Shown here: piece after piece, positions 1,530 to 26,387 of the stretch
Position numbering within the stretch: the stretch's first letter is position 1
How the letters are laid out: each line of letters starts with the position of its first letter
Assembly: GCF_021028975.2 (NCBI RefSeq)
Contig: NC_059431.1
Coordinates: forward strand, 30,566,001-30,630,000
Reading direction: 5' to 3'
DNA from: Sphaerodactylus townsendi
Lineage: Eukaryota
DNA length: 64,000 nucleotides
Notes under the pieces: model-generated
Database searches by the model: none
The model's input: the letters and a program-made list of their open reading frames with translations, nothing else
Told to the model about the DNA's origin: nothing
Translations under genes and position numbers: made by a program

Positions 1530-1765
1530 CTGACAGATTCTGCAGCGGTGATTGCAATTAGCGGAAGAGTCCGGAGCGGAAGACTGGTGGGCCGTGCCAT
1601 GGCCTCTGAATCACCTTTCCTATCCCAATCTGCTTGTTCCAGCTGCCTGAATGCCAAAGGGGGAAGCTGGAGTGTACGACAGGAAAGTCTCCTGACCCGG
1701 TATTGCTCCAGTCCTTGGAGAGCCCCTTCCTCTTCATTATGGGGGAACAGAGTTTCTTCAGACAC
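1530..1765 (-). CDS. PDE4D: Internal coding exon of a long-form cAMP-specific phosphodiesterase 4 (PDE4D7-type N-terminal exon)
   Basis: Translation VSEETLFPHNEEEGALQGLEQYRVRRLSCRTLQLPPLAFRQLEQADWDRKGDSEAMARPTSLPLRTLPLIAITAAES resembles human PDE4D7 as I recall it (SEETL..NEEE..VRRLSCRNIQLPPLAFRQLEQAD..RPTSLPL..LPLIAITSAES). Acceptor tttctttgttgttatag|GTG (phase 0) and donor AG|gtacgt (phase 2) give a 236-nt exon. A PDE4 paralogue cannot be fully excluded. Confidence 0.8.
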
Positions 1766-3345: not shown

Positions 3346-6300
3346 CACAGGTGTCAAACTCGTGGCCCTCCAGATGTTATGGACTACAGTTCCCATGATC
3401 CCCTTCCAGCATGATAGATAGGCTGTTAGACAGTGCTGGGGTGGAGTCAGCAGTTGTGGTCCACATTGGTACCAATGACATTGGGAAATGTAGCCGGGAG
3501 GTTCTGGAAGCTAAATTTAGGCTGCTAGGAAACAGGTTAAAATCCAGGACCCCCAAGGTGGCATTCTCTGAAATGCTACCTGTTCCACGCCAAGAGGGCT
3601 TAGCCAGGGGCAAGCCGGAGATACAGGGTCTCAATGCGTGCGGATGAGAAGGTGGGTGGTGCAAGGCAGAGGGCGTTTCCAGCTTTCTATTGTCAGGAAC
3701 TGGGGAACCTTTTGGGATAAGCAAGCGCAGGCCTGGTACACAAAAGCGGGACGCGGGCTTCATCTTAACTGCTAAAGAGGGAACCAGGGTTGCTGGCCAA
3801 CATTAAAAAAAAGGTGGCAGAACAGCTTTTAAACTGGATCCCTGGGGGAAAGCCAGACAGGAGCTGAGGTGAGACTTCGTCTGGAATACAGAGTCCATGG
3901 GGATGCAGACAGAGAGGGAGGTTTTTTCTAAATCAAACCACATTCACAAGTGAGGAGCACAGCAATAATGATAAGGGATAGTGTCTACAAAAGGCTAGGA
4001 GGGCAAACACACATAAATCCCCAGGTTAGGGACAGAAACAGAGGTATACAAGTGTCTCTATGCTACTATGTAGAAGCAGCTCTCAACCTAAAATGGGGGG
4101 AGCTGGAGTACAGAGTTTTGAAGGAGGACATTGATATAGTGGGCATCACAGGAGACATAGGGTGGAATGAGGGAGAACCAGTGGGATGCTGTTATCCCAG
4201 GTTACAGGCTCTACAGGAAGCTGATAGGACAGGGCTGTATTGGGGGTGGGGTGGCCTCTCTACATCAAAAGAGAGCATAAAGCGTCACATAAAATAGACA
4301 ATGTGCAGGGGGGGAGCTTCGGTTCCTCTACAGAAGCAACTGTGGGATATCAATACCAGGTGAAGCATAGTTTAACATTAATAGGAATATATTATCGCCC
4401 CCCTGACCAAAAGCTAACACAAGAGGATTCTGAGATGGAAAAGAAATTAGAGAGGCCAACAAAAGGCAAAATGTCGTGGTAATGGGCGACGTAGAACTAT
4501 CCCCAGATAAAACTGGAAAAATGCATGTTCAGGTCATAGTAAGGAGAGAAACATTCCTGGATATGCTAAATGACTGTGGTTTAGAGCAGATGGTTGTAGA
4601 ACCAACCAGGAGAGATGTGATCCTAGATCTAATTCTATAGGGACCCAGGACCTGGCAAAGGGAAGTCAGTGTGCTGCTTGAGCCGAGGGGAACAGCCACC
4701 TCACAATGCTGTCAGATTCAGTATCTCTTGCATGCTTAACAAGTGACAACTACTAATGTAGTTACATTTGCCTTCAGAAAGGGAAATTTCTCAAAGAGGA
4801 GGGGATAGTGCGAGGAAGCTGAAAGGGAAAAAATCAAGGAGAGTCAAAAATGTCCAAGATGCTTGGAGGTTATTTAAAAACACAGTCTTAAAAAGTTTCA
4901 GCTTGGAATGTGTTCCTACAGGTTAGGAAAGGCAGCCAGCCCAGTCCAAAAGAAAAGCCACCAAGGGTTAACAACAAGGGACGCTGAGGAAATTATTAGG
5001 AAAAAAAAAAGATGTCTTTTAGAAAATGGAAGTCCAACTTAACTTCGATAAAGCATCACCAGAGAGAACACAAATGGTGGCAAAAAGAGAAGCAAGTTAG
5101 CTGTAAGGGAGGCAAAAGGATTATGAGGAACGATGGCTGTGAACATCAAGACCAGCAACAAACAGTTCTTCTGCTACATCAAAAGCAGGAAGCCAAAGGC
5201 GCGGGAAGCCGTAGGTCCCGCGATGACAAAGCCGAACAAAGGGTAAAAAGTGCTAAAAAGATGACAGGGTGATTGCAGAGAAGCTGAATGAATTCTTTGC
5301 ATCTGTCTTCACTCCAGAGGAGGTTAGGACCATTCCTGCACCTGAACCAAGCTTCTTGTGGAGGTGAATCCTGAGGAACCAATCTAAGATAGTGGTGGTG
5401 ACAAGGAAGAAGTTCTTGGCAGCCATTGATAAACTAAATGCTACCAAATCCCCTGGCCCAGGATTGCATTCAACCCAAGAGTTCTAAAGAGCTCAAGCAT
5501 GAAATTGTTGGATCTTCTCACTTTAATATGCAACTTATCCTTGAAATTGTGCTCCATCCCTGAAGACTGAAGATACTAATGTCACACCAATCTTTAAGAA
5601 AAGGAACTAGGGGGACCCGGAAATTACAGGCCAGGGGCCGCTTGACATCTGTTCCTGGTAAATTAGCAGAATCTGTCATTAAAGATGTACTATAAAACAT
5701 GTACAAAAGCAAGACCTGCTGAGAAAGAGTCAGCATGGCTTTTGTGTAGAGGCAACTCTGGTCTTACAAACTTCTACTTAGAGTTCTTTGAGGATGTAAA
5801 CAGGGTATACGTGGATAAGGGGGAACCAGTGGAGCATGGTTCACTTGGATTTCCAAAAGGCTTTGACAAAGTTCCTCACCAGAGACTATTTGAGAAAACT
5901 CTGCAATCAAGGAATAAGAGGGGAAGGATCCCTCCTATGGATTAAAAAACTGGTTGAGAAACATGGTTAAAACAAAGAGTGGGTGTAAATGGGAAATTCC
6001 CACAATGGAGAGATGTCGGAGTGGTAATGTCCCCTAAGGATCCCAGTATTGGGACCTCAGTGCTCTTTAACCTATCATTCATAAATGAGACCTGGAAGTA
6101 GGTGGGTAGTGTGGTGGGCCAAGTTTGCAGATGATACCAAATTATGGTAGGGTGGTGAGGACCACAAAGGATTACGCAGTGAGCTCCAAGCTGACCTTTG
6201 ATAAATTAGGCAGAGTGGGCTAAGAAATGGCAAATGCAGTTCAATGTAGCAAAATGCAAAGTGATGCACATAGGGCAAAAAAAATCCAAACTTCTTACAT

Positions 6301-7243
6301 ACACGCTTACAGGGTCAGTGCTTATCAGTCACAGACCAGGAAAGGGATTTGGGCGCCTTAGCTGGATAGTTCCATGGGAATGTCAACTCCAATGGCTGGC
6401 AGCTGTGAAAAAGGCAAACTCTAAGTGCTGGGGATAATTAGGAAAGGAATTCGATAATAAAATTGCAAAGATTGTCACGTCTTTATATAAAAGTCATCGA
6501 AGCGACCGCGAGACTTGGAGTAATTTCCTGTAGTTCGAAGTTCTGGTCGCCAAGCATCTCAAAAAAAGGATATTGAAGAGATAGAAAAGTGCGAGAGCAA
6601 GGGCAACGAGGATGATTGAGGGACTGGAGCACCTTCCTTACGAGGAAAGGCTGCAGCCGCTTGGGGACTCTTTAGTTTGGAGAGGAGATCGCCTGAGGGG
6701 GGATATGATTAGAAGTTCATAAAATTATGCATGGGGTAGGTAACATCGTTGACAGAGAGAAATTTTCTCTTTCAACAATAATTAGAACCAGGGGCATTCA
6801 TTGAAAATGCTGGGGAAGAATTAGGACTAATAAAAGGAAACACTTCTTCAACGCTAAATTGTGATTGGTGTTTGGAATATGCTGCCACAGGAGGTGGTGA
6901 TGGCCACTAACCTGGATAGCTTTAAAAGGGGCTTGGACAGATTTATGGAGAAGAAGTAGATTTATGGCTACCAATCTTGATCCTCTTTGATCTGAGATTG
7001 CAAATGCCTTAACAGTCCAGGTGCTCGGGAGCAACAGCCGCAGAAGGCCATTGCTTTCACATCCTACATGTGAACTCCCAAAGGCACCTGGTGGGCCACT
7101 GCGAGTAGCAGAGAGCTGGACTAGATGGACTCTGGTCTGATCCAGCTGGCTTGTTCTTATGTTCTTATGTTCTTATGATGCTGACAGGGGATGATGGGAG
7201 CTGTAGTCCATAACATCTGGAGGCCACGAGTTTGACACCTATG
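3346..7243. mobile_element. Palindromic non-autonomous hAT MITE (~135 bp) split by a CR1 insertion
   Basis: TIRs cacaggtgtcaaac / gtttgacacctatg. Perfect 8-bp TSD ctcaggac at 3338-3345 and 7244-7251. An uninterrupted copy lies at 63694-63828. Confidence 0.9.
3414..7177 (+). mobile_element. CR1 LINE, 5'-truncated within ORF1 (SGNH esterase), followed by ORF2 (APE + RT) with many frameshifts
   Basis: ORF1 fragment VVVHIGTNDIG (SGNH block III). ORF2 fragments include DIVGIT, IGIYYRPP, FDKVPH, gcagatgataccaaa (ADDTK) and MQFNVAKCKVMH. The 3' tail is (TTCTTATG)n at 7154-7177. Confidence 0.93.
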
Positions 7244-7922
7244 CTCAGGACATTTTATATTGGCTCAACCTGGTTTTAAAAAAAACGCTGAACAAGCTAT
7301 TTTTCCCCTAAAGTCGGCATAGTCATCTCCTGCTTGTCATACAGAGCTCAGGAAATGACTTATTTCTCCTGCACAATCACACAGCTCTCACTTTCGGTTT
7401 CTGTCTTCATCAGAAATCAAACATTTTGGTTGGCTAATTCCTTCTTATTGTTATTAGCCATTTGCTAAGCACTGAATAAGCGCCTGCCAGCATCACTGCT
7501 GGTTGTTTTTTTTTATAAAGTGCCATATAATTCGCACTAGTGTTTCCTGCCAATTCTGGCAATATATAGCTTTCTGTTTTCTTTTTTTGTTTTTAATTTT
7601 CCACGACGTGATTCCCATATTGTGTGTTTATGTCTTTGAAGACATCTCATCAAAAAATTTAAAAAACAAAAAACTATATATTGCCGGAATCAACAGGAAA
7701 CACTAAGTTGAATCATGTACTTTATAAGCTAAAGAAGGGGACAGCAGCGATGCCTGCAGAGCAAATGTTCTGGGGCTTAGCAAATGGCTGGTGGCACAGA
7801 GGAGTTAATGGGCAGAAAACAGCAGATGCGAGCATGGAAATGGGTTTTTTAAAGATGTCCCCAGGACATCTTATCTTGGTTGTGTGGAAAAGATCCATTT
7901 GTCTCCATTTGTTTGGCTCTTA

Positions 7923-8073
7923 GGCCCCTTCCGCACATGCAGAATAACGCACTTTCAGTCCACTTTCACAACTGTTTGCATGTGGATTTTGCTATTCCGC
8001 ACAGTAAAATCCAGCTGCAAAGTACATTGAAAGTGGATTGAAAGTGCATTATTCTGCATGTGCGGAAGGGGCC
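7923..8073. mobile_element. Palindromic MITE, PIF/Harbinger-like
   Basis: Long TIRs ggccccttccgcacatgcagaataa / ttattctgcatgtgcggaaggggcc, flanked by tta and taa. A second copy lies at 20242-20382. Confidence 0.75.
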
Positions 8074-9317
8074 TAAATAGTTGCTCTTTTCTAAACCTTC
8101 AACAGGTCAACATCCATTTTGATGCAACTGCATCTGCTGTTTCCCAGCACTGAATTTGTCTTTTTCACAGGGGCAGCAGGGCATGCTGCATGGGTTGGCT
8201 GGGAACCTTCTGAGAGAGATTAATATGCTATTTCCGCATCACCCAGCATGCTTGTCACAAATCAACACAAATCTACACCCCACACCTTGTCCTATGTGCT
8301 GTAGCCCTCCCATGGATCTGACCCTGAGCTGGGCCCAATCAATCTTGCTGGCAGCCCCAGTGAGCATTATGCAACATAGTGCATTCCTGTTCCAAGTCCT
8401 TGGGATTCATGAGAGAAAAGAGATGAATTTAAATCACCAGTTTGGAGGGCAACAAAATCACACTTCCTCTGTTTGAATGACACAGCTGGTATTGCCTGCA
8501 AACCAATTCACAGAAGTTAACAGCTGAGAAGGGGTGTTTGCTTACATAAACTTCCCACTGTGCACCGCTTTCTTCTTTTCACACTACTGTCATGCTCCAT
8601 GAAAGTTAACCTTACCCAAGCACTAAAAAGGGAGAATATGATGATAGTGCATTAACTATAATGAGAATCATTTCCCAGGACAAATCATTCCTTCCATTTA
8701 ACCAGGAAAAAAATGGACAGCTGCTTGTTTGCCCTACCGGTATATTATGCAAATATGCAATTTCCACCTTTCCTTATCAGGCTATGACAATCACATGCAC
8801 TCCCGTGCCCACAGTTCAAGTTTGCAAGGAGCCACCCAAGACACACGGGGAAGGAAGGAGCTGTGGTTGCCTACATACAGTTGTGGATTCAGGCCCTACA
8901 ATCTTCACAAAATGCCTGGAAACCCCTTTCCCTGCCTGAGATCCCAGAGAGTCACTATTAGTCAGAACAGGCAGTGCAAAGCTAGATGAACCAATGGTCT
9001 GACTCTGTCCAAGGAATCTTCATGTGTTCATCAAGAAGAAAACAAACAATTAAATGAAAAGTGACATTTGTGTCTTGCAAACAGGGGTCCATTCTTCACA
9101 GCACAAATAAAAATGTCCTGAGGACAGTAAAAGAAGCGTTTTGGGGAGAAAGCGCGGCCGCGGCTTACCCGCAGGCCGCCGTTGCGGGCCGGACGGGACC
9201 CGGCTCAGGCGGCGCCGCCCGGTCAGGGCAATGGCGTGGCCTCAGAGCACGGTCGCGCATGCACGTTGGCCGGGCTCTGGCAGGCCGCGTCATATGCAGG
9301 CGCCAGCAGGCGCTTGC

Positions 9318-9323
9318 ATATAA
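9318..9323 (+). promoter_or_regulatory. Candidate TATA box of the element's 5' module
   Basis: atataa in an otherwise very GC-rich 5' terminal region, upstream of gag. Confidence 0.45.
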
Positions 9324-10145
9324 GGAGGCGGCCTCGTGGGCGAGCCCAGTCTCGCCCAGGACGCCGGAACGCGAAGATCGTCGCTGGATCGCTCAGCCGG
9401 GTGGGTCCTTACAGAAGACGGGGTCGGGTCTTCATTCACTGGGCTTCACAACGCCCCCCCCCCCCCGCGCGCAACTTGCGGCTGCGGCTTTCTTCTCCGG
9501 CGGCAGCCGGGTAAGCCGGTGGCGGGGCCTTGGGGGCTTCCCCGACAACGCAGCTTTGCGGGGCCTCCACTGAGCCTCCCCTACTCCCCGGACGGCATTG
9601 GTGCAGGATTTTCGGGCCGAGCCGGGCCTTGCGCCCCCCCCCCCGCGACATTAGAGGGCTCCCCCCCGGCGTTGCCCGCATGTTTTTTGGCTGGAGGAGC
9701 GGCGCCCGTTCACCCGGCCGACTGGTCGGGTCCCTGGAAGGGACCTCAAAGTAAACGGGGCGTGGGAGTTTCCCCCGCCTGGCATCCGCCGCTCCCGCCC
9801 TCAGCCCGGCGGCCCGGCAGACGCGGCCCAGCTGGGGTTGGGGAGGGGACCTACTTTGGGGATCCCCCGAGTGGTGCTCTGCGGCAGGGGCGGATCTTTA
9901 CCCTTCCACTGGTTTCTACTTCATCGGCGGCTCGTGGCAATATCACGCGCGGTAGACTGGCGCGAGGTTAACCGCAGCTTCTTTCTCAATTTCTCCTCAG
10001 ATATTTAGCACTGCAGTGCTTGGCGCAGGTGGCTCGCGAGAGTCATAGGTTGGTGGGTTGAGGGCTCAGGTGCTCCTAGTGGGTCGGTGTCCCCCAACTC
10101 AGCTTAGTATTTTCTGTTCACTGTCCCAGTTTTCATAACCGGGCA

Positions 10146-11651
10146 ATGGCACCCAAGAAAGGGGAGCAGCGTGCGCCCTCCACTAGTGGCCGGGGCACTA
10201 GGACTAGTGCCCGGCGCGCCGTGGCCTCTAAGGGTGACCGGCAGCGGGCGGTGGGTGAGGCGGCGTCCCGTAAGGCCAGCACGAGAGCAGGCAGTCCCGC
10301 CACGGGGCAGAGCAAGGGGCGCTCTTCCAGCACCACAGCCCGGAATAAGGCCACCCCGGCCCATTCAGGGCCCAAGACCGCTTCCAAGGCCCAGGCCGCG
10401 AAACCTGCACCTAATAGGGGCGCGGCAGGCACAAGAGGGGCCCCTAGTTCCAAGTGGCCTAGGCGCTCGGATGCTGAGCTGTCCCAGCGGCCCCCCCCGT
10501 CAGGGGCTGCAGATGTCAGCAGCCTCATCTTTAGGAATTTGGCGGACACCTTTAGCCAGCTGGCCCAAGGGGCACCTGGGGGGCCTGCTGCCTCCTTTGC
10601 ATCTACGTCAGCGGCCCCGCAGCGCAGGGTGGGACCCCCGCGGGGGCAAGGGAGTGGTACTTCCTTGCAGGTTGTCGAGGAGGAGGGGGCGGTGACCTCG
10701 GCATCTGAAGGGGAGTCTGACGAGAGGGGGTCAGTCGTTCACCCACCGCGTAAGAAGAATCGGAAGTCGCGGAGACGTCGGTCGTCACGCCGCAGAGACT
10801 CTTCATCTTCATCGAGTGAGTATTCCTCAGACGAGGACTCCCTTCATGAGGATGGCGCCTTTTGGGAAAACAGGGCAACCATCCCCATGCTGCCACCTTG
10901 TCTCAGCAGTCGCAGGGATAAGAGCCTGGGCTTTCCGGAGGGGGCCACCCCTCCCCCCGCCCCCTTTTCGGGCACCAAAACCGTTAAAAATCCCCCAGGT
11001 CGCCATCTCACCAAGAAATTGAAGGAGAGGGCACTCAATGGCTACTACGTGGATGTGTTTGACTTCATTCGCCCAGGGTCCTCACCAGGAACCACTGGCC
11101 CCTCCCCGGCCACCGCCAAAAAAGGGAGGAGGGTGGAACGGTCATTTGACAACTGGCTTTCTGGTTTTGGGGAGTACATGGCCTTGATTGCGGCGGCTTA
11201 CCCGCTGAGGGCCTGGCAGCTGGGGGCCCACCAGTGTCACGTTTTGAGAGCCAGGGTCATCGGGGGTGACTTGGCGGCGATTACTTATGATGAAGAGTGC
11301 CGCAGGGCGGTGTCTGACACCAGTAACATCAGGTTGGACACGATCAATAGTGAGGCCTGGACGACCATGGTCCAGCCCTTCGCACGTTCCCAGAGTCAGG
11401 GTTTTAAAAGGAGGGGCAATTTCAGGGGCGATGGCCCCCGCCTGGTTTGCTGGGAGTATAACCAGGGCAGGTGCCAGAGACAAAAATGTAAGTTTGAGCA
11501 CTCATGTGAATCCTGCTTCGGTCCGCACACCAGGCTGGCCTGCCCGAAGGGGAGGAAATTACAGCCCTTTCGTGGAGCCCGGCCCTCTGCCAACTCAGTT
11601 CCTAGGAAGGATGGGGGGTCAGGCCCGCCTGCAGCACCCAGTTCTGCCTAG
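10146..11651 (+). CDS. gag: Gag-like ORF1 (501 aa)
   Basis: ATG in good context (gcaATGg). Low-complexity N-terminus with a basic/Ser-acidic tract, then a DIRS/Ngaro gag-like core (GYYVDVF..SFDNWLSGF..YDEECRR). C-terminal Cys/His finger CWEYNQGRCQRQKCKFEHSCESCFGPH..C. Confidence 0.85.
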   Translation: MAPKKGEQRAPSTSGRGTRTSARRAVASKGDRQRAVGEAASRKASTRAGSPATGQSKGRSSSTTARNKATPAHSGPKTASKAQAAKPAPNRGAAGTRGAPSSKWPRRSDAELSQRPPPSGAADVSSLIFRNLADTFSQLAQGAPGGPAASFASTSAAPQRRVGPPRGQGSGTSLQVVEEEGAVTSASEGESDERGSVVHPPRKKNRKSRRRRSSRRRDSSSSSSEYSSDEDSLHEDGAFWENRATIPMLPPCLSSRRDKSLGFPEGATPPPAPFSGTKTVKNPPGRHLTKKLKERALNGYYVDVFDFIRPGSSPGTTGPSPATAKKGRRVERSFDNWLSGFGEYMALIAAAYPLRAWQLGAHQCHVLRARVIGGDLAAITYDEECRRAVSDTSNIRLDTINSEAWTTMVQPFARSQSQGFKRRGNFRGDGPRLVCWEYNQGRCQRQKCKFEHSCESCFGPHTRLACPKGRKLQPFRGARPSANSVPRKDGGSGPPAAPSSA

Positions 11652-13272
11652 CCCCACAGACCTTGACTCGTTACACCGTATCGCTCTTACTCCTATTAAG
11701 ATCACCCCATTAGCTGCTTTACTTGCAACCTATCACAACCGGGCGGCCGCTCAGTTTCTTTTGAGCGGTTTTTCTCAAGGTTTCCGCATCCCCTACACGG
11801 GCCCTCGTACGGCGACTGTCTGCGGCAACTTGAAATCGGCTCGTGAGTTGCCCAGAGTTGTGGCCGCCAAGTTAGCAAAGGAGGTGGCCGCCGGCCGCAT
11901 GGCTGGCCCCTTCTCCGACCCGCCCATCCCGAACCTTAGGGTCTCTCCTCTGGGGGTGGTCCCCAAGAAGGCCCTGGGCGAGTTTCGCCTCATACACCAT
12001 TTGTCCTACCCGCGGGGTTTCTCCGTTAACGATTTTATTGACCCCAAGCTCAGCTCAGTGAGGTATGCATCACTGGACCATGCCATCTCCTTAATCAGAG
12101 CATGTGGCCTGGGAGCGATGCTGGCGAAGTGTGACATTCAGTCTGCTTTCCGCTTGCTGCCCATTCACCCCGACGACTTCTGCCTATTGGGCATTAAATT
12201 CGATGGTCATTGGTTCATTGACAAGGCCATGCCAATGGGCTGCTCGATAGCTTGCGCGGCTTTCGAATGCTTCAGCTCTTTCCTGGAGTGGGCTGCCAAG
12301 GGCCGGGCAGCCAGCCCTCATATCACTCACTATCTGGACGATTTTTTGTTTGTGGGCCGGGCCAGTTCCAGTGAGTGCCTGGACAGGCTTCATACATTCG
12401 AGGCCCTGACATCCGAGCTGGGGGTCCCCCTTGCAGGGGAGAAGACAGAGGGGCCGTCCACCTCTCTAGCCTTCTTAGGGATTACCCTTGACACTGTGCG
12501 GGGCACGTCCAGCCTGCCCATGGATAAGGTCAATAACCTGAATGCGGTCTTACATGATATGGCCAGCAAGCAGAAATGCACCCTTAAGGACGTCCAGGTC
12601 GTGTTGGGGCACCTGAATTTCGCTTGCCGGGTCATTGCCCTGGGCAGGCCTTTCTGCGCCAGATTGGCACAGGCCACGCGGGGAGTTAAGGCTGCCCACC
12701 ACTATATTCGGGTCACCGCGGGCATCAAGGCCGACCTGGCGGTGTGGCTAGAGTTTCTCAGGCATTTCAATGGGACTTCTTTGTGGCAAGCTAGATTCAC
12801 ACCAGAAGCCACTCTACAGGTACACTCTGATGCTTCAGGCAGTCTCGGGTTGGGAGTCTATTTCAGGGGCAGGTGGTGCGCCCAACGTTGGCCGGTGGAG
12901 TGGGAGGCTACGGGCCTCCTCCGGGACCTCACCTTCCTGGAGTTGTTCCCCATTTTGCTCGCTGTATATCTGTGGGCCCCTCACTTTGTGAACCGCAAGG
13001 TGGTGTTCTGGTGTGATAACCTAGCCGTAGTGCGGGTCATCAACCGTCAGTCTTCACGCTCTGAGTGGGTCATGCGCTTGGTCAGGAGGTTCGTGGCGCT
13101 TTCTTTGATTAACAACATCTCTTTTGTGGCCCAGCATGTCCCAGGAACCGACAACGAACTGGCGGACGCTCTTTCTCGCTTTCAGATGGTGAGGTTTTGG
13201 CGTTTGGCTCCCGGGGCGTGTCCACACCCGGACCCCTTCCCACAGGAGCTGTGGGATCTTGGCAACACCTGA
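11266..13272 (+). CDS. pol: Reverse transcriptase / RNase H (ORF2); true start uncertain (ATGs at 11287 and 11611)
   Basis: RT motifs KCDIQSAFR, MPMG and YLDDF. RNase H motifs SDAS, LELFPI, WCDN and ADALSR. The frame is uninterrupted and +1 relative to gag. Confidence 0.93.
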   Translation: MTWRRLLMMKSAAGRCLTPVTSGWTRSIVRPGRPWSSPSHVPRVRVLKGGAISGAMAPAWFAGSITRAGARDKNVSLSTHVNPASVRTPGWPARRGGNYSPFVEPGPLPTQFLGRMGGQARLQHPVLPSPTDLDSLHRIALTPIKITPLAALLATYHNRAAAQFLLSGFSQGFRIPYTGPRTATVCGNLKSARELPRVVAAKLAKEVAAGRMAGPFSDPPIPNLRVSPLGVVPKKALGEFRLIHHLSYPRGFSVNDFIDPKLSSVRYASLDHAISLIRACGLGAMLAKCDIQSAFRLLPIHPDDFCLLGIKFDGHWFIDKAMPMGCSIACAAFECFSSFLEWAAKGRAASPHITHYLDDFLFVGRASSSECLDRLHTFEALTSELGVPLAGEKTEGPSTSLAFLGITLDTVRGTSSLPMDKVNNLNAVLHDMASKQKCTLKDVQVVLGHLNFACRVIALGRPFCARLAQATRGVKAAHHYIRVTAGIKADLAVWLEFLRHFNGTSLWQARFTPEATLQVHSDASGSLGLGVYFRGRWCAQRWPVEWEATGLLRDLTFLELFPILLAVYLWAPHFVNRKVVFWCDNLAVVRVINRQSSRSEWVMRLVRRFVALSLINNISFVAQHVPGTDNELADALSRFQMVRFWRLAPGACPHPDPFPQELWDLGNT

Positions 13273-14168
13273 TTGCTGAGGGAGTGTTGGCATCGATTGC
13301 ACCTGCCACGCGGCGGGCGTATCAAGGAGCCATTAGGGCCTTCATTTCCTTCCACCAGTCGCAGGATGGACCGGCTGAGCCATTGTTTGGAGATACATCA
13401 CTCCTGCGCTACCTTGCCCATCTCCGTTCACAGGGTCGGGCAGCCAAGACCATGCGGCTGCATTTGGCAGCAGTATCCTTTTGCTGTAAGGCCTCTGGCA
13501 TTAATGACCCTACCGCCTCTTTCCTGACCAGGCAGGCAATTAAAGGATGGGGCAGGACCAGCCCCCGCAAGCCGGATGGGAGGCGCCCAATCTCATTAAG
13601 TTTGCTGTCCCGCCTGGCGTCAGCCTTGCCCCGCATTTGCTCCTCCGGTTTTGAATCGGTACTTTTTCGGGCCACTTTCAGCCTGGCCTTTTTCAGGGCT
13701 TTCCGGCCCGGGGAACTCGTGAGCACGTCATGCAGCAGCTCCAGCTCCAGGCCCCTCCGGGTCGGGGATGTGCAGGTTATGGGCGCCACCCTGGCCATCA
13801 CACTGCACCAGTCCAAAACTGATCAAGGGGCCAGAGGGTCTTTCATTACCATGCAGGAATCCACAGCGCAGGGCCCCTGCCCAGTGGCTGACACTGTGGC
13901 GTACCTTGCAGTTCGCCCCAATCGGCCTGGACCTCTACTTTTACATAAGGATGGGTCGTTTTTGTCTCGCTACCAGCTTATGGCAGTCTTCAAGTGCTGC
14001 CTGTCTGCATTGGGAGAGTCACCCTCTTCCTATGGCCTTCATTCCTTCCGGATCGGGGCGGCATCCACGCTTGCCGATCTGGGGGTCCCTGCCAGCAGGG
14101 TCATGGACGTTGGGCGCTGGAGGTCAGGGGCATTCAGGACTTACATCAGGCCGCTTACCCCGGCATGA
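13197..14168 (+). CDS. Tyrosine recombinase (ORF3); first ATG only at 13452
   Basis: Full catalytic set R (AFRPGEL), K (SKTDQ), HxxR (HSFRIGAAS), W (GRW) and Y (FRTYIR). The N-terminal core-binding segment (ASIAPATRRAY) lies upstream of the first ATG. Confidence 0.93.
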   Translation: MAFGSRGVSTPGPLPTGAVGSWQHLIAEGVLASIAPATRRAYQGAIRAFISFHQSQDGPAEPLFGDTSLLRYLAHLRSQGRAAKTMRLHLAAVSFCCKASGINDPTASFLTRQAIKGWGRTSPRKPDGRRPISLSLLSRLASALPRICSSGFESVLFRATFSLAFFRAFRPGELVSTSCSSSSSRPLRVGDVQVMGATLAITLHQSKTDQGARGSFITMQESTAQGPCPVADTVAYLAVRPNRPGPLLLHKDGSFLSRYQLMAVFKCCLSALGESPSSYGLHSFRIGAASTLADLGVPASRVMDVGRWRSGAFRTYIRPLTPA

Positions 14169-14218
14169 CGCGCCTACCTAGTTACAGGCCCTCATTTCTT
14201 TTCTCTTAGTTTCTGCAG

Positions 14219-14790
14219 GTGCCGGAAAAGTCGTCTGGGTGGTGGGCCACAGTATCGTCTACTGGGCTTCCCAGTACGCTGCATCGTCAGGCTGGAGTCA
14301 CGACCTGGGCCTCCGGCACCACCTGCACGTTTTCTGGTTTGGTTTCAGAGGCATGCGTTGGCATGACCTCCTTCCTCTCCTCTGGACCAAGATTCGAGCC
14401 TTTGGCCCTCCACAAGCTTTGATCATCCAACTCGGGGAGAACGACATCCCTGCGATTCGGCGGGTGGAGCTGCTCCAGTCAATCATCAGAGACATTGGCA
14501 TCATACACCGCCTCGCCCCTAAGACGACTATTTTCTGGTCCCACCTTCTGGAACGCCGCGTTTGGAGGGGGGCGCTGGACCCCCGCCGGGTGAACCGGGC
14601 AAGGGAAAGGACTTGTAGGGCCGTTGCGTGTTTTGTACTCGGGCTAGGGGGGCGGGTGATTCCGCACCACGACATTTCGTTCGGTTTAGAGGCTTTGTTC
14701 AGGGCAGATGGTGTTCACCTGACACAGTGGGGCATGGATCTTTGGTTACATGACCTGAGGTCGGGTTTGTGCGATTGGCTGGACATTTAG
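14219..14790 (+). CDS. SGNH/GDSL-type hydrolase (ORF4), probably a spliced 3' exon
   Basis: Blocks VWVVGHS (Ser codon at 14251), RGMRW, QLGENDI and DGVHL. The frame is open from 14182, but the first ATG (14353) is downstream of the Ser. A polypyrimidine tract with AG at 14208-9 and 14217-8 precedes it. Confidence 0.82.
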
Positions 14791-15170
14791 GAGGCATTTG
14801 GCGGGAGCAGGGGTGGTTCCCACCCCGCTCTCTGGCGGGTTGCGCATGGGGGGTGATCGTTTTAGTGAAGGGGAGCTACGGGAGCTCTTCTGGTAACACC
14901 TCCATAAGAGGTGAGGGCGGAGCAAGCCGAAGGTTGGGACGCCCGGCAGGGGCTACCAAGGCTTGCGCCCTGGCAGCAGGTTGGAACAGGCACCAGAAAG
15001 GGGTCTATCGCTCATCTGGCAGATCCTGATCCAATCTGACCTTCATGCTCAATTCCTCCAGCAGGCGGGCTGAGGAATTATTTAACTCTGGGGGACAGCA
15101 CTTGTGCTGCCCAGATCCTTTGATCCCCCCCATGCTGCGCCAAGTTTTTGCTTCCAATTAATGTCTTGCC

Positions 15171-15176
15171 AATAAA
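15171..15176 (+). terminator. Polyadenylation signal in the element's 3' module
   Basis: aataaa ~110 nt from the 3' end, followed by GT/T-rich sequence. Confidence 0.55.
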
Positions 15177-16215
15177 TATCTCTGGCTATGGCCAAATTGT
15201 TTACCCACTATAAGTTGTCATGCGTTTTATTGTGGTCAAATAGTCGGGGTTGCATGAGCCACCTGGTTCCCGCCTCGGCCTGCAAACTCCACACACCTTT
15301 TTTGCCAAGAAGTCTTCAGGACGTTTCTGCTCAACTCATCGCATTTAGAAAATGCTAAACTAGCAATCTTTTTTCTCACCATCCCCGGAAAAGGGGGAGC
15401 TGAGTACACAGGTACATTGGGTATATGGTGGAACCAACTGTTATTATATTGAGATATCAATATAATTTAGAAGTTGATGTGTTTTAGCTAAGCTCGTGCG
15501 GTTGAGCTTCTTTTCTTTGACTTTCACTTCCTGGCTACTGAAAGATGTCAGCAGGATAATTATGAAACAGAAAGGAGCCAACAACACGGAAGGGGGAGTG
15601 AGAAGAAAGGTATGTATTGCAATTTGAGGGAATGTGAAGGTTGAAGCTGGGTCGGCTGGCTATGGGTGGAAGGAAGATGTCCAGGGCAAAGCTGTGCTCA
15701 CTGATAAATGTGCCCTGCTCTGGTGGTGAACCAAATTAAAGTCACACTAGAAGTGGTGTTGCTTGCCGTGGAGAGAATGGAAAGTGAAAGTAGGGCTTGA
15801 GAAAATATGTCTGTACAGGAAATCTTGCTGCAATGGACATTTGCCCCTGCTGTGAAGTAGGCACTTGGTGTGTCATCAGCCCTGGTGTTTAATCAGCTCC
15901 CCTCACTCAAAAATGAGATTTTTCTACTGAAATGGCTGATTACAGCTAAGTCACCAATATTCTGCACAAACTGATATTTTAGGAGATAAGATGAACCTCC
16001 AAAAGCCTTTTTTTCTGATCAACCATATGTCTTACTTTTGACGTGGAGGCACCATAATAGTAATATTTAGTGCAGGAACTAGATTTCTTAACAACCTCAG
16101 CTTGCAGACTGAGACCAGGAAAACAATGAGGGAGAGAAGAGGAAGGAGAACAGCAGGACAAAGGAAGGAAACACATGGAGAAAATGAAAAATAACTGCAG
16201 GTTAGGAGCAGGTTG

Positions 16216-17193
16216 GCGAGGCACCTGTGGGACCCTGAGAGCTGGAGTGAAAGATCTCTATTAGCAACTTGAAGCTGAAAAGATAACTGTGAGACTGTTA
16301 CACAAACTGATAAAGCAAGAAAGAAAAGGCCTGATAGGCTGCGGAACCTGTACAACTCTACTGTTAAACTGGTAGAAACCCCTTTGTAACCAGTGTCTTC
16401 CCTGTTTGGTTTTAGGTAGCCACATTCTGATTCTCCCAGGCTGTCAATGATTCAAGGTGGGAGGGGGTAAAATCATGAGTACGGTCTGTTCTGCTGCTCA
16501 GTGTTATTGATTCTGTGTCTTTGCTCTACTGCATCAGTTTTATCTCTGGTAAATTTAAATTTCTGCTTAGTTTTAGGGGGGCGGCTTTCCTTTTTTAATA
16601 ATGATTTTTATTAAGTTTTTATGAACTACAAGTTGCTAAAACAAATACAGAGAACAAAATAGTGAACCAATCGGGTTAGCTTTCACGTCGGATTTAACTG
16701 GTTCTGCGAGGCACCTGTGGGACCCTGAGAGCTGGAGTGAAAGATCTCTATTAGCAACTTGAAGCTGAAAAGATAACTGTGAGACTGTTACACAAACTGA
16801 TAAAGCAAGAAAGAAAAGGCCTGATAGGCTGCGGAACCTGTACAACTCTACTGTTAAACTGGTAGAAACCCCTTTGTAACCAGTGTCTTCCCTGTTTGGT
16901 TTTAGGTAGCCACATTCTGATTCTCCCAGGCTGTCAATGATTCAAGGTGGGAGGGGGTAAAATCATGAGTACGGTCTGTTCTGCTGCTCAGTGTTATTGA
17001 TTCTGTGTCTTTGCTCTACTGCATCAGTTTTATCTCTGGTAAATTTAAATTTCTGCTTAGTTTTAGGGGGGCGGCTTTCCTTTTTTAATAATGATTTTTA
17101 TTAAGTTTTTATGAACTACAAGGCTGCTAAAATAACACAGAGAACAAAATAGTGAACCATCGAAGGCTTTCACGGCCGGATTTAACTGGTTCT
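16216..17193. repeat. ~490-bp tandem duplication (16216-16705, 16706-17193)
   Basis: Both units start gcgaggcacctgtgggacc. They look identical over ~420 bp and differ by scattered indels in the last ~70 bp. Confidence 0.9.
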
Positions 17194-17331
17194 GGTGGGT
17201 TTTCCAGGCTGTGTGGCTGTGGTCTGGTGGATCTTGTTCATAACGTTGCGCCTGCATCTATGGCTGGCATCTTCAGAGGTGTATCACAGAGGGAAGTCTG
17301 TTACACACTGTGACACTGGACCCTCTACAAC
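17159..17331 (-). mobile_element. Penelope-like element terminal fragment with degenerate hammerhead ribozyme
   Basis: tcgaaggctttcacggccgg..gcatcttcagagg resembles lizard Penelope ends. It is flanked by the 14-bp direct repeat caaaatagtgaacc (17145-17158, 17332-17345). Confidence 0.7.
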
Positions 17332-17688
17332 CAAAATAGTGAACCGATCACCCTACATTCTAAACTACATAAACAACAAAGGATACACATTACATTTAAC
17401 TACTTGACTTCCTGCCCCAAACCCACTGCTATATTTGTCCTTAATGTTATATTTCTATTTCCATTAATAGAATTTCCATTAAAGTGGACTAGCACTTTTT
17501 TTTCCTGAAAAGCTATTTAATTATCATTTGGTTTCATTTAAAATACAAACATACGGTAACCTTATCCCTTCAACTCAGTTCTTGGCTTTGAAAGCAACTA
17601 CATAAAATAAGAGGTGCATGGCTTGGATATGGTTTTCCATGCCAACACAAAGCTATCTGAGGTCTGTGATGCAGAAGATACCTTAATG

Positions 17689-18080
17689 CAGAGGTGGGAT
17701 CCAGCAGGTTCTCACAGGTTCCCGAGAGTAGGTTACTAATTATTTGGGTGTGCTGAGAGGGGGTTACTAATTGGTGATTTTGCCACATGATTTTTGCCTT
17801 AGTTACACCCCTCCTCTCAGCAGTAGCATGCAGAACTTGAAGCAGTCTAGCAGGAGGTGCACCGGCGTGTGTGGCAGCCTGCGCCTGCGTGCATTCATTT
17901 CCTGCCCAAGGACCGGCACAGCAGCTGCGTCCTTGCCACAGACCTGCCCAGGAATGCCCCATCCCTGGAATGCCCGGCCACGCCCCCATTGTGCCCCACC
18001 CAGCCCCATTGGCGCTACGCCACAGTTTGAATCCCACCACCATGGGAACCTGTTACTAAATTTTTTAGATCCCACCACTG
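17689..18080. mobile_element. Non-autonomous hAT element
   Basis: TIRs cagaggtgggatc / gatcccaccactg. Perfect 8-bp TSD ccttaatg. Confidence 0.9.
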
Positions 18081-18117
18081 CCTTAATGGACAATTCTGCT
18101 GCTGAGGCTAAGAGCTC

Positions 18118-18698
18118 TGTGATGAACAGGAGGCTGTCCTGCTCCTGAAGGGAAAATCGGTCACTCTGAAAAGCCAGAGAGGACTGTTGTTTCAGCATCC
18201 AATCACCTTTGAGAAGGGGGATGACAGAAGAAGAGTTTAGATTTGCCTCAGGGAGAGAGCAGAGACAACCAAGGTCTGGCTCAGGAAAGGGAGTAGACAG
18301 AATGAAAGGCAGCTGTCTCAGGTGTGTCGCAGAGCAGTTTAGCTCTGACTCTTGGAGAGAAGAGAGTGCTTGATTGCCAGACCTCTCTCTGATGATGTAC
18401 TATTGAGGCCTGTCTCTTGGTCTCTTGTACCATTTAGTCTGACTCTGGGGAAAGGGCAGGCTGGTGTGGGTGGAATCCTGCGTATGAGAGAGGACCCACC
18501 TTAGTAGCCTGTCAATAAAGGTCTGTGATTGAAGGCACTGAAGAAAAGTCTAGCTACTCCCTAGTCTTTACCAGGTTAAAGTTTTGTGCCTCAGCCAGGT
18601 TTCTCATTTGTCTACCTAAAAAACTGTACTGTTGGTTTTTTCGTAGCTTATATATTAATCCAGCCTCAGTGATCTCAGGAACCTCCTTGTGCACCACA
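18118..18698 (+). mobile_element. Possible old solo LTR
   Basis: tgtgatg..caccaca ends with an internal aataaa. No convincing TSD. Confidence 0.3.
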
Positions 18699-19527
18699 AA
18701 AGTTACTGCACAGCAGTGAACCCAAAGCATTTACACTCACTACCTGTAGAACACTTGGAAACTGAGGGGAAAGTTTATAGTTCAAAATAAACCTAAATCC
18801 CCAAAATCATAAGAAGTTGTGTGCATCTCCTCAATAGGGGGGGAAAAAGCTCGCCACAAGCTCCTATTCCTCATGGGAGGAATCTTAATCTGGGCTCTAC
18901 TACTCAGCTGCTTCACTCTCCTGTAAGAAGAACACCTGAAGGGACGCCAACCCACACTGTCAGCATATATGTCATCAAACCAAGGATTTTCAAACTACTG
19001 TTCTTGCTAGCTGTTAGCTAAAGAGCAGAGCTTTAGTGCTCAGCAGGTTTGCTTCACTATGTATAAACTCAGTTGGGTTCCGACTATTTAATTATAGAGG
19101 CAAAGATGGTCTTGCCTTGCAGCTCTCCCTATTATGCAAAATTCACCTTTGTGCATCTACTGGCATTGCTGCCCACTCCTGATTGAATCCGGATTAGTTC
19201 TACTGAAGCCTTCTGGCTACATCAGAGAAAACAATGTAGTGTTTCTCCCATAACAAATCAAAGAAATGTCGCATCTGTACGAAAGCCAAAACATCACTGC
19301 CTCCCAAGTCCATTAAAGCATTTTTCTTAGCCTTTGTGATAAAAATGGAGTGTGGTAATATTCTGAAGAATAATTCACAGCTTAGTCAAGGACTATTTAC
19401 AAGTTACAAATCCATGTACTGAACATACAGACTTTGTACTGAACATACAGACTTTTTGTCCCATTGGGATAACTTACAAATAAGCAAATAACAGCTCTCC
19501 ATAGGCATTTAAGAATGGGAAGGTGGC

Positions 19528-20030
19528 ATAGACAAGACAAGACAACCTTTAACGGCACAGTTAAAATTATTACATTACATTTATGCCATTAAGGGTTGTG
19601 GGAATTGAATTAAATTATTACATTAGATATAATACTTAGCCCATAGAAGTATCTGTTGGACATCAATCATAGCCTTCACTTAAAATTATTTGCAAGACTA
19701 AACAACTGTTGATCAGAGATTGCTAATAAAACATTTGCCACTTCAAAAGTAATGGTTGAGTTTCAGTCCATTGATAAGAATCAAAGAAGTTCACATTTGT
19801 TCAGTCTCTGGTAAAATTATGCTACAGTCCTAAATAATTTCTCCAAGTCTTTATGCAGTTGACAGTCCAACAGGATATGAGAGAGGGAATCAGGGGTCCC
19901 GCATCCACCAATGCAGAGTCTCTCTGAATACGGAATTCGCTGGTTTCTGCCAGCTAAGACTGCTGAGGGTAGAGTGTTTGTTCTGGCTTCCATGAATGCT
20001 CTTCTGAGTCTAGCATTGTCAGGTAGTTTT
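19528..20030 (-). mobile_element. Non-LTR retrotransposon 3' fragment (RTE-X-like)
   Basis: Minus strand reads RAFMEARTNTLPSA and ends in a short (TTGTC)n tail. It resembles the fragment at 29240-30105. Confidence 0.45.
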
Positions 20031-20241
20031 GTTGGGCATATATATGTACCCAGAAGAGACAGATTCTCAGTTACTTTTTATATATGAGTTTACTAACTAT
20101 AAAGGGAGGGTTACATGGAGATAAAATAAGAAATCCTTTCTTTCCTGTTACACATCTACATTACTGTACGTTTGGTTACCTATCTGCTGGCTTGTACTCA
20201 TGGCTGTAGCGGTATGCTGGTGGCGTGTCCGCTGAAACAAA

Positions 20242-26300: not shown

Positions 26301-26387
26301 CCAGTAACAAATTTGCAATATGATCTCTAGTGCCTCTTCCTTTTCTGAATCCTGCTTGAACATCAGGCATTTCTTGTTCTATATACA

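What the first reader, a model, noticed from the sequence alone, without database searches (positions are those of the whole stretch)
9152..15283. Apparently intact, young Ngaro-type YR retrotransposon with four open ORFs including an SGNH hydrolase, in a squamate PDE4D intron
Seen: gag, RT/RH, YR and SGNH frames have no stops or frameshifts. All expected catalytic residues are present (YLDD; RNase H D-E-D-D; R-K-HxxR-W-Y; S-G-N-DxxH). CpG is retained in a CpG-poor host. Known: Ngaro elements lack the DIRS1 methyltransferase, and some amphibian Ngaro elements carry an SGNH ORF of unknown function. Inference: this is a recent insertion from a possibly active reptile family. It lies antisense to the PDE4 gene.
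Basis: partly seen in the sequence, partly recalled or inferred. Interest (0 to 1): 0.8.

Follow-up and report, generated by a model that had tools for sequence, protein, structure and literature searches.

The report
Coding-intact lizard Ngaro retrotransposon lacking repeats
This is a recently inserted copy of a known kind of jumping gene (a Ngaro tyrosine-recombinase retrotransposon carrying an esterase gene) in a lizard or snake PDE4D gene; its genes are unbroken, but it lacks the family's terminal repeats and its esterase seems to need RNA splicing to be made.

Summary
Window 9149-15297 (+) carries four open frames in the order gag, RT/RNase H, tyrosine recombinase (YR), SGNH esterase. All catalytic residues are present. 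CpG o/e is 0.61-0.87 against 0.22 in the flanks. The element lies antisense and upstream of a confirmed PDE4D exon (1530-1765, minus strand) of a squamate.

It belongs to the Ngaro lineage. It has no methyltransferase domain. All four ORFs are homologous and collinear with lizard, snake and Xenopus elements that carry split direct repeats (SDRs).

"Intact" is overstated. This copy has no SDRs, whereas four intact relatives have them at 99.5-100% identity. Its 5' end matches a relative's A-repeat start, and its 3' tail looks like a single B repeat. That fits a B1/B2 recombination or an assembly collapse.

The SGNH frame has no ATG before its catalytic serine. A GTGAGT donor in gag (10815|10816), conserved among closer relatives, and a polypyrimidine-AG acceptor (14218|14219), seen in every relative examined including Xenopus, are both phase 1. 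They predict a spliced Gag-N-terminus-esterase fusion. The nearest solved relative is the zebrafish LINE ORF1p esterase.

Youth is supported only indirectly. Copy number could not be tested. This is a new member of a known kind, of moderate interest.

The parts
9149..15297 (+). Whole retrotransposon copy (about 6.15 kb): 5' non-coding region, gag, RT/RH, YR, SGNH, 3' non-coding region. It contains no internal or terminal repeats.
   Evidence: GC and CpG step at about 9150 and about 15000-15300. No direct or inverted repeat over 25 nt links the two ends.
9149..10145 (+). 5' non-coding region. It is GC-rich (0.67) with CpG o/e 0.87. Its first 70 nt or so are homologous to the start of the A1 repeat of the snake element L007.
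   Evidence: Local alignment of window 9156-9216 with L007 6030-6098 scores 37, against 18.3 +/- 2.4 for shuffles (0 of 500 reach it). It begins AAAGCG like the L004 and L003 A repeats. The ORFs inside it have no Pfam hit.
10146..11651 (+). gag-like ORF1 (501 aa). Residues 1-223 are basic, Ser/Ala/Arg-rich and low-complexity. The C-terminal part is conserved and carries a CCCH zinc finger.
   Evidence: tblastn matches residues 230-495 to the gag regions of L001-L007 at 24-47% identity. Composition: 86% disorder-promoting residues and net charge +28 in residues 1-223. Zinc finger.
10816..10821 (+). Predicted 5' splice site GTGAGT. Exon 1 would end at 10815, after the first base of gag codon 224 (phase 1).
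   Evidence: The same GTGAGT sits at the homologous Ser-rich gag position, also in phase 1, in L001, L002 and L006. The annotated donor of the Sphaerodactylus model P0130 is the same octamer.
11266..13272 (+). RT/RNase H ORF2 (+1 frame relative to gag, 386-nt overlap). YLDD at 12331-12342. RNase H D/E/D/D fall in the motifs starting at 12823, 12934, 13009 and 13159. There is no methyltransferase domain.
13197..14168 (+). Tyrosine recombinase ORF3 (-1 frame relative to RT/RH). Catalytic motifs start at 13698 (R), 13812 (K), 14040 (HxxR), 14112 (W) and 14136 (Y).
14190..14218 (+). Predicted 3' splice site: a polypyrimidine tract with two in-phase AGs (14208-14209 and 14217-14218). Exon 2 would start at 14219 (or 14210), in phase 1.
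   Evidence: An equivalent tract plus AG lies 20-45 nt upstream of the GHS codon in L001, L003, L004, L005 (Xenopus), L006, L007 and L008. It is used as the acceptor in four annotated models.
14182..14790 (+). SGNH esterase frame (ORF4). The folded domain starts at about 14227. Motifs: GHS at 14245, RGMRW at 14347, LGEND at 14431, DGVHL at 14707. There is no in-frame ATG upstream of the catalytic Ser.
   Evidence: AlphaFold2 model with pLDDT 93.5. SGNH fold matches with TM 0.65-0.75. The profile hit to 4c1b has E=1.5e-6.
14791..15297 (+). 3' non-coding region, interpreted as a single B repeat. AATAAA lies at 15171-15176, about 120 nt before the end.
   Evidence: In L003, L004, L005 and L007 the B repeat starts 20-30 nt after the SGNH stop, is 427-596 nt long, and carries AATAAA 65-119 nt before its end. 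The end-motif resemblance is weak and not significant.
1530..1765 (-). Host PDE4D exon (N-terminal, long-isoform-specific) with a splice acceptor and donor. The retrotransposon lies 7.4 kb upstream of it on the gene's strand, in antisense orientation.

Best explanation
The feature is a recently inserted copy of a squamate family of Ngaro-lineage tyrosine-recombinase retrotransposons. It runs gag, RT/RNase H, YR, SGNH esterase, and lies antisense in a PDE4D intron. Shown: all four reading frames and their catalytic residues are intact. Shown: the copy has no split direct repeats. Its 5' end is an authentic A-repeat start, and its 3' tail has the size and poly(A)-signal position of one B repeat, so its layout is A-internal-B rather than A1-internal-B1-A2-B2. 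Inferred: this arose by B1/B2 recombination, or by collapse of B-A-B in the assembly. Inferred: if the layout is real, the copy can still supply proteins but probably cannot regenerate full termini, so it is not autonomous in cis. Inferred from comparative evidence: the unspliced RNA serves gag, RT and YR. The esterase comes from a subgenomic mRNA spliced from the gag donor at 10815|10816 to the acceptor at 14218|14219 (3403-nt intron, phase 1 on both sides). That would fuse the basic, disordered first 223 residues of Gag to the SGNH domain. By analogy with its closest solved relative, the zebrafish ZfL2-1 LINE ORF1p esterase, the domain is probably a weak lipolytic esterase and acidic-phospholipid binder that brings the element's ribonucleoprotein to membranes.
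For: ORFs, domains and residues. Collinear homology of all four ORFs with L001, L003, L004, L005 and L007. Split direct repeats in those relatives (A of 184-241 nt, B of 427-596 nt, 99.5-100% identical). None in the window. 5' end homologous to the L007 A1 start. Position of AATAAA in B. Splicing: the SGNH frame opens at 14182 without an ATG. Polypyrimidine-AG precedes SGNH in eight loci, including Xenopus. GTGAGT lies at the homologous gag codon in four elements that share only 30-47% gag identity. Four NCBI gene models in Podarcis, Zootoca, Sphaerodactylus and Erythrolamprus join a gag exon to SGNH with GT..AG, phase 1, and introns of 3365, 3398 and 3570 nt. The exon-2 start coincides with the start of the confidently folded domain. 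Esterase; ZfL2-1 properties from PMC3905857. Youth. Host gene.
Against: I have no RNA evidence for the splice. The NCBI models may be partly ab initio, and such models pick in-frame GT/AG pairs by construction. The lacertid models use different donor hexamers. The window has a second phase-1 GTAAGT in the gag zinc finger (11487|11488), although its position is not conserved. Absence of SDRs might be normal for this unsampled family: one Xenopus Ngaro-like consensus is reported without SDRs (PMC9210276). The similarity of the 3' end to relatives' B ends is not significant. CpG level does not separate young from decayed copies well: the degraded Eublepharis copy has 0.57. Esterase function is by analogy only.
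Confidence: 0.7

Rival explanations
1. One reading: a complete, autonomous, possibly active Ngaro element.
For: All frames are open and all catalytic residues are present. CpG is high. The 5' end looks authentic. One published Xenopus Ngaro-like family consensus lacks detectable SDRs.
Against: No A or B duplication exists anywhere within 4-21 kb of the window. Every intact relative examined, from frog to snake, has A1...B1-A2-B2. No second copy is in the window. No close relative is in the databases searched.
Confidence: 0.15
2. The locus is really complete (A1-internal-B1-A2-B2), and the assembly collapsed the identical B repeats, dropping A2 and one B.
For: The observed layout, an authentic A start followed by one B-sized tail, is exactly what a B1/B2 collapse would leave. 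In relatives B1 and B2 are 99.8-100% identical over 427-596 nt, which is hard to resolve with short reads.
Against: Nothing in the window indicates a collapse. There are no Ns at the site; the N runs are at 26515-26722 and 61441-61643. A real B1/B2 recombination gives the same sequence, so the two cannot be told apart here.
Confidence: 0.25
3. The SGNH frame is expressed without splicing (non-AUG initiation, reinitiation or frameshifting after YR), or it is not expressed from this copy at all.
For: DIRS-group ORFs commonly overlap and lack their own AUGs. RT/RH and YR here also lack a nearby ATG. Some relatives do have an in-frame ATG upstream of SGNH (L003, L001). No RNA data are available.
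Against: YR and SGNH are separated by stop codons, and their relative frame differs between elements: +1 in the window and -1 in L003. The junction phase relative to gag is 1 in every model. A pyrimidine-rich AG site is kept in the short YR-SGNH spacer in eight loci.
Confidence: 0.25
4. An old insertion whose frames are kept open by host selection (a domesticated gene).
For: Open frames can reflect selection as well as youth.
Against: Four different overlapping frames, the splice signals and a CpG-rich UTR are all preserved. The location is antisense and intronic. No host-gene-like orthologue set appears: the nearest proteins are 54-66% identical, multi-copy TE products.
Confidence: 0.03

Closest known systems
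Ngaro-like families of Xenopus tropicalis (DIRS-53_XT and DIRS-54_XT in PMC9210276). A genomic example was fetched here as L005.
   Same: Same four ORFs in the same order: gag, RT/RH, YR, SGNH. No methyltransferase domain. RT is about 50% identical, YR about 34% and SGNH about 32%. A polypyrimidine-AG site, phase 1, lies before the SGNH domain.
   Different: L005 has split direct repeats: A1 5728-5911 equals A2, and B1 11303-11784 equals B2. The window copy has none. The host is a squamate, not an amphibian. gag N-termini are unrelated in sequence.
Squamate elements behind NCBI 'uncharacterized protein' models: Podarcis L003, Zootoca L004, Erythrolamprus L007, Sphaerodactylus L006, Eublepharis L002.
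   Same: Collinear homology of all ORFs, with RT 50-60% identical. The gag-to-SGNH splice layout is the same. GTGAGT sits at the same gag site in the gecko elements. The 5' end resembles the A1 start of L007.
   Different: This is a different family: the window's RT joins a clade with unnamed Logan and ENA sequences, a gecko and an anole, at 0.68 or more substitutions per site. Those with intact ORFs keep SDRs.
Esterase domain of the zebrafish ZfL2-1 LINE ORF1p (PDB 4c1b; PMC3905857).
   Same: It is the best solved-structure match by sequence profile (E=1.5e-6, with the next at 5e-3 or worse; 25% identity). Same SGNH fold and the same catalytic Asn and Asp-x-x-His blocks. In both cases a retroelement attaches the esterase to its nucleic-acid-packaging protein.
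   Different: In the LINE the esterase is part of ORF1p, behind a coiled coil, in an element that uses target-primed reverse transcription. Here it is a separate 3' frame of a YR retrotransposon, apparently joined to the Gag N-terminus by splicing. Block I reads GHS rather than GDS.
Subgenomic spliced mRNAs of retroviruses and env-bearing LTR retrotransposons (from established knowledge; an analogy only).
   Same: A 5' donor near or in gag and an acceptor just upstream of a 3' accessory ORF. The unspliced RNA doubles as genome and gag-pol mRNA.
   Different: The product here is an in-frame Gag-N-terminus fusion to a cytosolic-type esterase, not a membrane glycoprotein. The element uses a tyrosine recombinase, not an integrase.

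Membership tests
Ngaro (YR retrotransposons, order DIRS) | Encodes RT/RNase H followed by a tyrosine recombinase on one strand, after a gag-like ORF | tested here: met
Ngaro (YR retrotransposons, order DIRS) | No methyltransferase-like domain after RNase H (this distinguishes Ngaro from DIRS1-like and PAT-like) | tested here: met
   The last RNase H Asp (D634) is 34 residues from the ORF2 stop, and the YR frame already overlaps it. Pfam finds no other domain.
Ngaro (YR retrotransposons, order DIRS) | Split direct repeats A1 ... B1-A2-B2 | tested here: not met
   No direct repeat links the ends at seed sizes 7-11 over window 4000-21000. The repeats are present in homologous elements L003, L004, L005 and L007. 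So this copy is filed as a Ngaro-lineage copy by homology, not as a structurally complete Ngaro element.
Ngaro (YR retrotransposons, order DIRS) | RT and YR group with Ngaro reference elements rather than DIRS1 or PAT in a phylogeny | tested here: inconclusive
   No DIRS1, PAT or DrNgaro1 reference sequences were obtainable. The RT falls in a squamate clade inside a set that includes the X. tropicalis SDR+SGNH element.
Ngaro, tetrapod subgroup with a fourth ORF | SGNH hydrolase ORF downstream of YR | tested here: met
   Literature description.
DIRS1-like | Inverted terminal repeats plus an internal complementary region, and a methyltransferase domain | tested here: not met
   Only three short inverted pairs (21-24 nt, 75-86% complementary) were found, none of them terminal. 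There is no methyltransferase domain.
SGNH/GDSL hydrolases | Block I Ser, block II Gly, block III Asn, block V Asp-x-x-His | tested here: met
   S24, G57, N87, D176 and H179 are invariant or nearly invariant in 24 homologues. The Asn and DxxH blocks align to 4c1b.
SGNH/GDSL hydrolases | Three-layer alpha/beta/alpha SGNH fold | tested here: met
   AlphaFold2 pLDDT 93.5 and pTM 0.89. Foldseek probability 1.00 and TM 0.65-0.75 to TesA, PAF-AH Ib and sialate O-acetylesterases.
SGNH/GDSL hydrolases | Esterase or lipase activity | not testable with these tools
   Needs an enzyme assay.
Tyrosine recombinases | Catalytic R-K-H-R-(H/W)-Y | tested here: met
   The HxxR...W...Y box aligns to Cre.

The most novel reading that the evidence does not exclude
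Tetrapod Ngaro elements, from Xenopus to lizards and snakes, express their fourth gene from a conserved subgenomic splice that fuses the disordered, basic N-terminus of Gag in frame to a LINE-ORF1p-type SGNH esterase. A YR retrotransposon would then make two Gag-headed proteins, one for packaging and one for lipid or membrane targeting, in the way retroviruses make Env. The window copy keeps both splice sites intact.
Probability: 0.6. Interest if true: 0.5.

Novelty: new member of a known kind. Interest (0 to 1): 0.4.

Why it matters
Ngaro elements with an SGNH ORF are described for amphibians. The searches here show that the same four-gene design is widespread in squamate genomes, where its products are annotated only as 'uncharacterized proteins'. 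This window adds a coding-intact copy of a family that is otherwise unsampled. On its own that is routine transposable-element annotation.

Two points give it some value. First, the copy shows that open reading frames alone do not make a YR retrotransposon intact, because the terminal repeat architecture has to be checked as well. Second, the comparative evidence gives a concrete, testable answer to how the esterase ORF of unknown function is expressed: a phase-1 gag-to-SGNH splice. It also indicates what the domain resembles, namely the lipid-binding esterase of L2/CR1 LINE ORF1p. That links an open question in two retroelement classes, which is why retroelements carry SGNH esterases.

An insertion antisense in a PDE4D intron with a CpG-rich 5' region could also matter locally for that gene, but I found no evidence for or against this.

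Tried and rejected
1. I searched for split direct repeats and ITRs with the repeat finder and word-7 BLASTN over 8.5-16 kb and then 4-21 kb. None belong to the element.

2. The 100%-identical repeat at 16216-17194 looked like a possible B1/B2. It is a plain 490-bp tandem duplication outside the element.

3. I looked for other copies in the window by BLASTN and tblastn. There are none. The only hit is a 72% match of 105 nt at 39054-39154 on the minus strand.

4. An exact look-up of gag and two ATG-started RT versions found nothing in the collection, so copy number could not be estimated.

5. I considered a second strong phase-1 donor, GTAAGT at 11487|11488 in the gag zinc finger. L001 has one six codons away. 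Both arise from Cys/Gly-Lys codons and are absent from the other elements, so I rejected them as chance.

6. GTRAGT occurs four times in the element, about what chance gives, so the hexamer alone is not evidence.

7. The match between the 3' end motif and the lacertid B ends is not significant against shuffles.

8. The look-up of P0127 failed.

9. L008 turned out to be genomic, not a spliced cDNA.

10. Goodwin & Poulter 2004 (the Ngaro founding paper) is not held, so what it says about ORF4 expression is unknown to me.

11. I looked for slippery heptamers in the RT/YR overlap and saw nothing canonical.

12. I did not run the large representative-protein search, because the word search and family scans left no protein unidentified.

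13. The N runs were left untouched.

Full report
OBSERVATION. The stated region is a sharp compositional island. GC is 0.55-0.68 between about 9.0 and 15.0 kb, against 0.39-0.46 on either side. CpG o/e is 0.66 overall: 0.87 in the 5' kilobase and 0.61 in the coding part. The remaining 57 kb has 0.22.

Four long open frames lie on the + strand:
- 10146-11651, 501 aa, starting with ATG.
- 11266-13272, 668 aa.
- 13197-14168, 323 aa.
- 14182-14790, 202 codons.

Pfam assigns RVT_1 to the second frame, the phage-integrase SAM-like domains to the third, Lipase_GDSL_2 to the fourth (30.1 bits, just under the 32.9 cut-off), and a weak CCCH finger to the first.

CATALYTIC RESIDUES AND DECAY. I aligned the RT/RH frame with the 120 best database homologues. 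110 columns are at least 95% conserved, and the window copy departs at one of them (F529L). Conserved columns include D290, Y356-L-D-D359 and the RNase H residues D522, E559, D584 and D634.

In a six-element YR alignment the Arg of AFRPGE, SKTD, HSFRIGAA, GRW and the Tyr of TYIR fall in invariant columns. The C-terminal box aligns to Cre.

In 24 SGNH homologues G22-H23-S24, G57, G85, N87 and (nearly) D176 and H179 are invariant, and the window copy has all of them.

I simulated neutral decay on the actual sequence, with CpG sites mutating 10 times faster and indels at 10% of substitutions. All four frames stay open with probability 0.08 at 0.5% divergence and 0.006 at 1%. With substitutions only, the 5% level is reached near 2.5% divergence.

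CpG is no lower than in relatives whose repeats are 100% identical (0.70 in L003, 0.54 in L005). It is a weak clock, though, because a broken gecko copy still has 0.57.

WHAT IT IS RELATED TO. The word search with RT/RH found 696 homologues. The best is only 66% identical, on a Logan contig. The named hits are 'uncharacterized proteins' of Eublepharis, Anolis, Zootoca, Podarcis, Hemicordylus, Rhineura and Erythrolamprus, followed by amphibians. The SGNH frame finds 31 homologues, again in squamates and at most 54% identical.

I fetched the loci behind several of these hits. tblastn with the four window proteins shows the same order, gag-RT/RH-YR-SGNH, in L001 (Logan), L003 (Podarcis muralis), L004 (Zootoca vivipara), L005 (Xenopus tropicalis) and L007 (Erythrolamprus reginae). 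L002 (Eublepharis) and L006 (Sphaerodactylus) are deleted copies.

A FastTree of the RT places the window in a well-supported clade with two unnamed sequences, then a gecko and an anole, then lacertids. The nearest tip is 0.68 substitutions per site away. So this family itself is unsampled in the databases.

The literature held here describes exactly this design for amphibians: Ngaro-like elements, no methyltransferase, split direct repeats, and an extra SGNH ORF 'with no proven function' (PMC9210276). I found nothing that describes it for squamates, although DIRS-order elements are known there.

NGARO OR NOT. Three features fit. The element has no methyltransferase domain: ORF2 ends 34 residues after the last RNase H Asp, and the YR frame overlaps it. 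It has no ITR/ICR. It has the fourth SGNH ORF.

A phylogeny against DIRS1 and PAT references could not be done, because no such sequences were obtainable. That test is inconclusive.

The defining split direct repeats are absent from this copy. Nothing links the 5' and 3' parts at seed sizes down to 7, over 4-21 kb of the window. All four intact relatives have them:

| Locus | A1 = A2 | B1 = B2 |
|---|---|---|
| L003 | 4083-4293 = 10805-11015 | 10381-10807 = 11188-11614, 100% |
| L004 | A 206 nt | B 596 nt, 99.5-99.8% |
| L005 | A 184 nt | B 482 nt |
| L007 | A 241 nt | B 467 nt, 100% |

I therefore file the feature as a Ngaro-lineage copy by homology that fails the structural criterion.

WHAT HAPPENED TO THE ENDS. 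The first 70 nt or so of the element align significantly with the start of the A1 repeat of the snake element (score 37 against 18.3 +/- 2.4 for shuffles, 0 of 500). They begin AAAGCG like the lacertid A repeats. The 5' end, at about 9149, is therefore authentic and not truncated.

In every relative, B1 starts 20-30 nt after the SGNH stop, is 427-596 nt long, and has AATAAA 65-119 nt from its end. In the window the tail after SGNH is about 480-505 nt, with AATAAA (15171-15176) about 120 nt before the composition break at about 15297. The resemblance of the last bases to lacertid B ends is suggestive only.

The simplest reading is A-internal-B. This is what homologous recombination between B1 and B2, or a collapse of the identical B repeats in the assembly, would leave. 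The two cannot be distinguished here.

In the accepted model for SDR elements (from my knowledge of Poulter and Goodwin's reviews, not tested here), the internal B1-A2 copy restores the transcript's missing ends. If the layout is real, the copy is probably not self-sufficient for replication, although it could supply proteins.

HOW THE ESTERASE IS MADE. The SGNH frame opens at 14182, 14 nt after the YR stop. It contains no ATG before the catalytic Ser; the first Met lies downstream of it. Just upstream of the domain lies a 29-nt pyrimidine-rich tract ending in two AGs (14208-9 and 14217-8).

The same arrangement, a pyrimidine tract and AG 20-45 nt before the GHS codon, is present in L001, L003, L004, L006, L007, L008 and the Xenopus element L005.

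Several NCBI models of SGNH homologues begin with gag-like basic and Ser-rich sequence. Mapping four of them onto their loci gives, in each case, a GT..AG intron that runs from the N-terminal part of gag to this acceptor, with phase 1. Intron lengths are 3365, 3398 and 3570 nt, and 1533 nt in the internally deleted copy.

In the window the homologous Ser-rich spot of gag reads TCG A|GTGAGT. Exon 1 would end at 10815, the first base of codon 224, which is phase 1. The acceptor at 14218|14219 supplies the other two bases of a codon in the SGNH frame, and the alternative AG nine bases upstream is also in phase. The intron would be 3403 nt.

GTGAGT occupies the same codon position in L001, L002 and L006, although the surrounding gag sequence is only 30-47% identical. 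The hexamer alone occurs four times in the element. A stronger-scoring GTAAGT in the zinc finger is a by-product of Cys-Lys codons and is not positionally conserved.

Exon 2 begins two or three residues before the first strand of the confidently modelled domain. The residues upstream of it have low confidence.

I did not build, translate or search the joined product.

The exon-1 part of Gag (223 residues) is 86% disorder-promoting residues, has a net charge of +28, and ends in an Arg/Lys-rich stretch.

I rate the splice as likely (about 0.6-0.7). There is no RNA evidence, and gene models may choose in-frame sites by design.

WHAT THE ESTERASE RESEMBLES. The AlphaFold2 model from the 24-sequence alignment is confident (pLDDT 93.5, pTM 0.89). 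It matches SGNH hydrolases such as TesA, PAF acetylhydrolase Ib and sialate O-acetylesterases at TM 0.65-0.75.

By sequence profile the best solved relative, by three orders of magnitude, is 4c1b, the esterase domain of the zebrafish ZfL2-1 LINE ORF1p (E=1.5e-6, 25% identity). Its low TM in the fold search reflects the domain-swapped crystal form.

That protein is a slow esterase that binds acidic phospholipids and liposomes, and it was proposed to give ORF1p Gag-like membrane targeting (PMC3905857). GDSL ORFs are also known in bdelloid LTR elements and Athena elements (PMC5408684).

By analogy, the Ngaro esterase, tethered to the Gag N-terminus, would act in membrane or lipid association of the element's particles. 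This is inference.

HOST CONTEXT. A minus-strand exon at 1530-1765, with a polypyrimidine-AG acceptor and a GTACGT donor, matches short annotated PDE4D N-terminal proteins. Identities are 84% to Phrynocephalus, 76% to two snakes, 68-70% to turtle and alligator, and lower to birds and mammals.

The host is therefore a squamate and the gene is PDE4D. The element lies 7.4 kb upstream of this exon on the gene's strand, in antisense orientation.

Homologues have a 15-residue exon further 5'. I did not find it in the window. An intronic position is therefore likely but not shown.

VERDICT. This is a real, coding-intact and probably recent copy of a known kind of element, in a host group where the kind is common but little described. 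'Intact' and 'possibly active' go beyond the evidence, because the terminal repeats are missing and no other copy could be examined. The new points are comparative: a conserved phase-1 gag-to-SGNH splice layout, and kinship of the esterase with LINE ORF1p esterases. Interest is moderate, and the feature is a new member of a known kind.

Noticed in passing
window 16216-17194: A plain tandem duplication of a 490-bp unit (two copies, 97% identical overall, with long 100% stretches), 0.9 kb downstream of the element. It is not related to the element's repeats.
   Followed up: partly
window 7920-8076 and 20241-20385: Two copies (85-93% identical) of a roughly 157-bp palindromic repeat with inverted ends, resembling a MITE or foldback element of the host.
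   Followed up: no
window 39054-39154 (-), with a GC- and CpG-rich patch at 39250-39750: A 105-nt stretch is 72% identical to the element's 3' non-coding region around its AATAAA, and a second short collinear match lies about 200 nt away. It may be an old fragment or solo remnant of a related element. No coding homology was found nearby above chance.
   Followed up: partly
window 25944-26400 (-), next to the N run at 26515-26722: Open frames here read like a LINE reverse-transcriptase fragment (motifs of the type QAGFRKGRGT...FIDYNKA). I did not search them. The N run was left alone.
   Followed up: no
window 54326-54614 (-): Simple-sequence tract that translates as long runs of Glu, Val, Gly and Ser (trinucleotide repeats).
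   Followed up: no
L002 11923-12549 and L006 7001-9372: Relatives decay by internal deletion. The Eublepharis copy fuses a truncated YR directly to the last residues of SGNH. The Sphaerodactylus copy has lost most of RT and all of YR but keeps the gag donor and SGNH acceptor, and it is still modelled as a spliced gene.
   Followed up: partly
window 11266-11651 and 13197-13272; L003, L005: The frame relations gag to RT (+1) and RT to YR (-1) are the same in the window, the Podarcis element and the Xenopus element. The RT and YR frames lack nearby ATGs. How they are translated is unexplained, and I saw no canonical slippery heptamer in the RT/YR overlap.
   Followed up: partly
window 7456-7789: A roughly 330-nt imperfect palindrome (69% self-complementary) in the 5' flank.
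   Followed up: no
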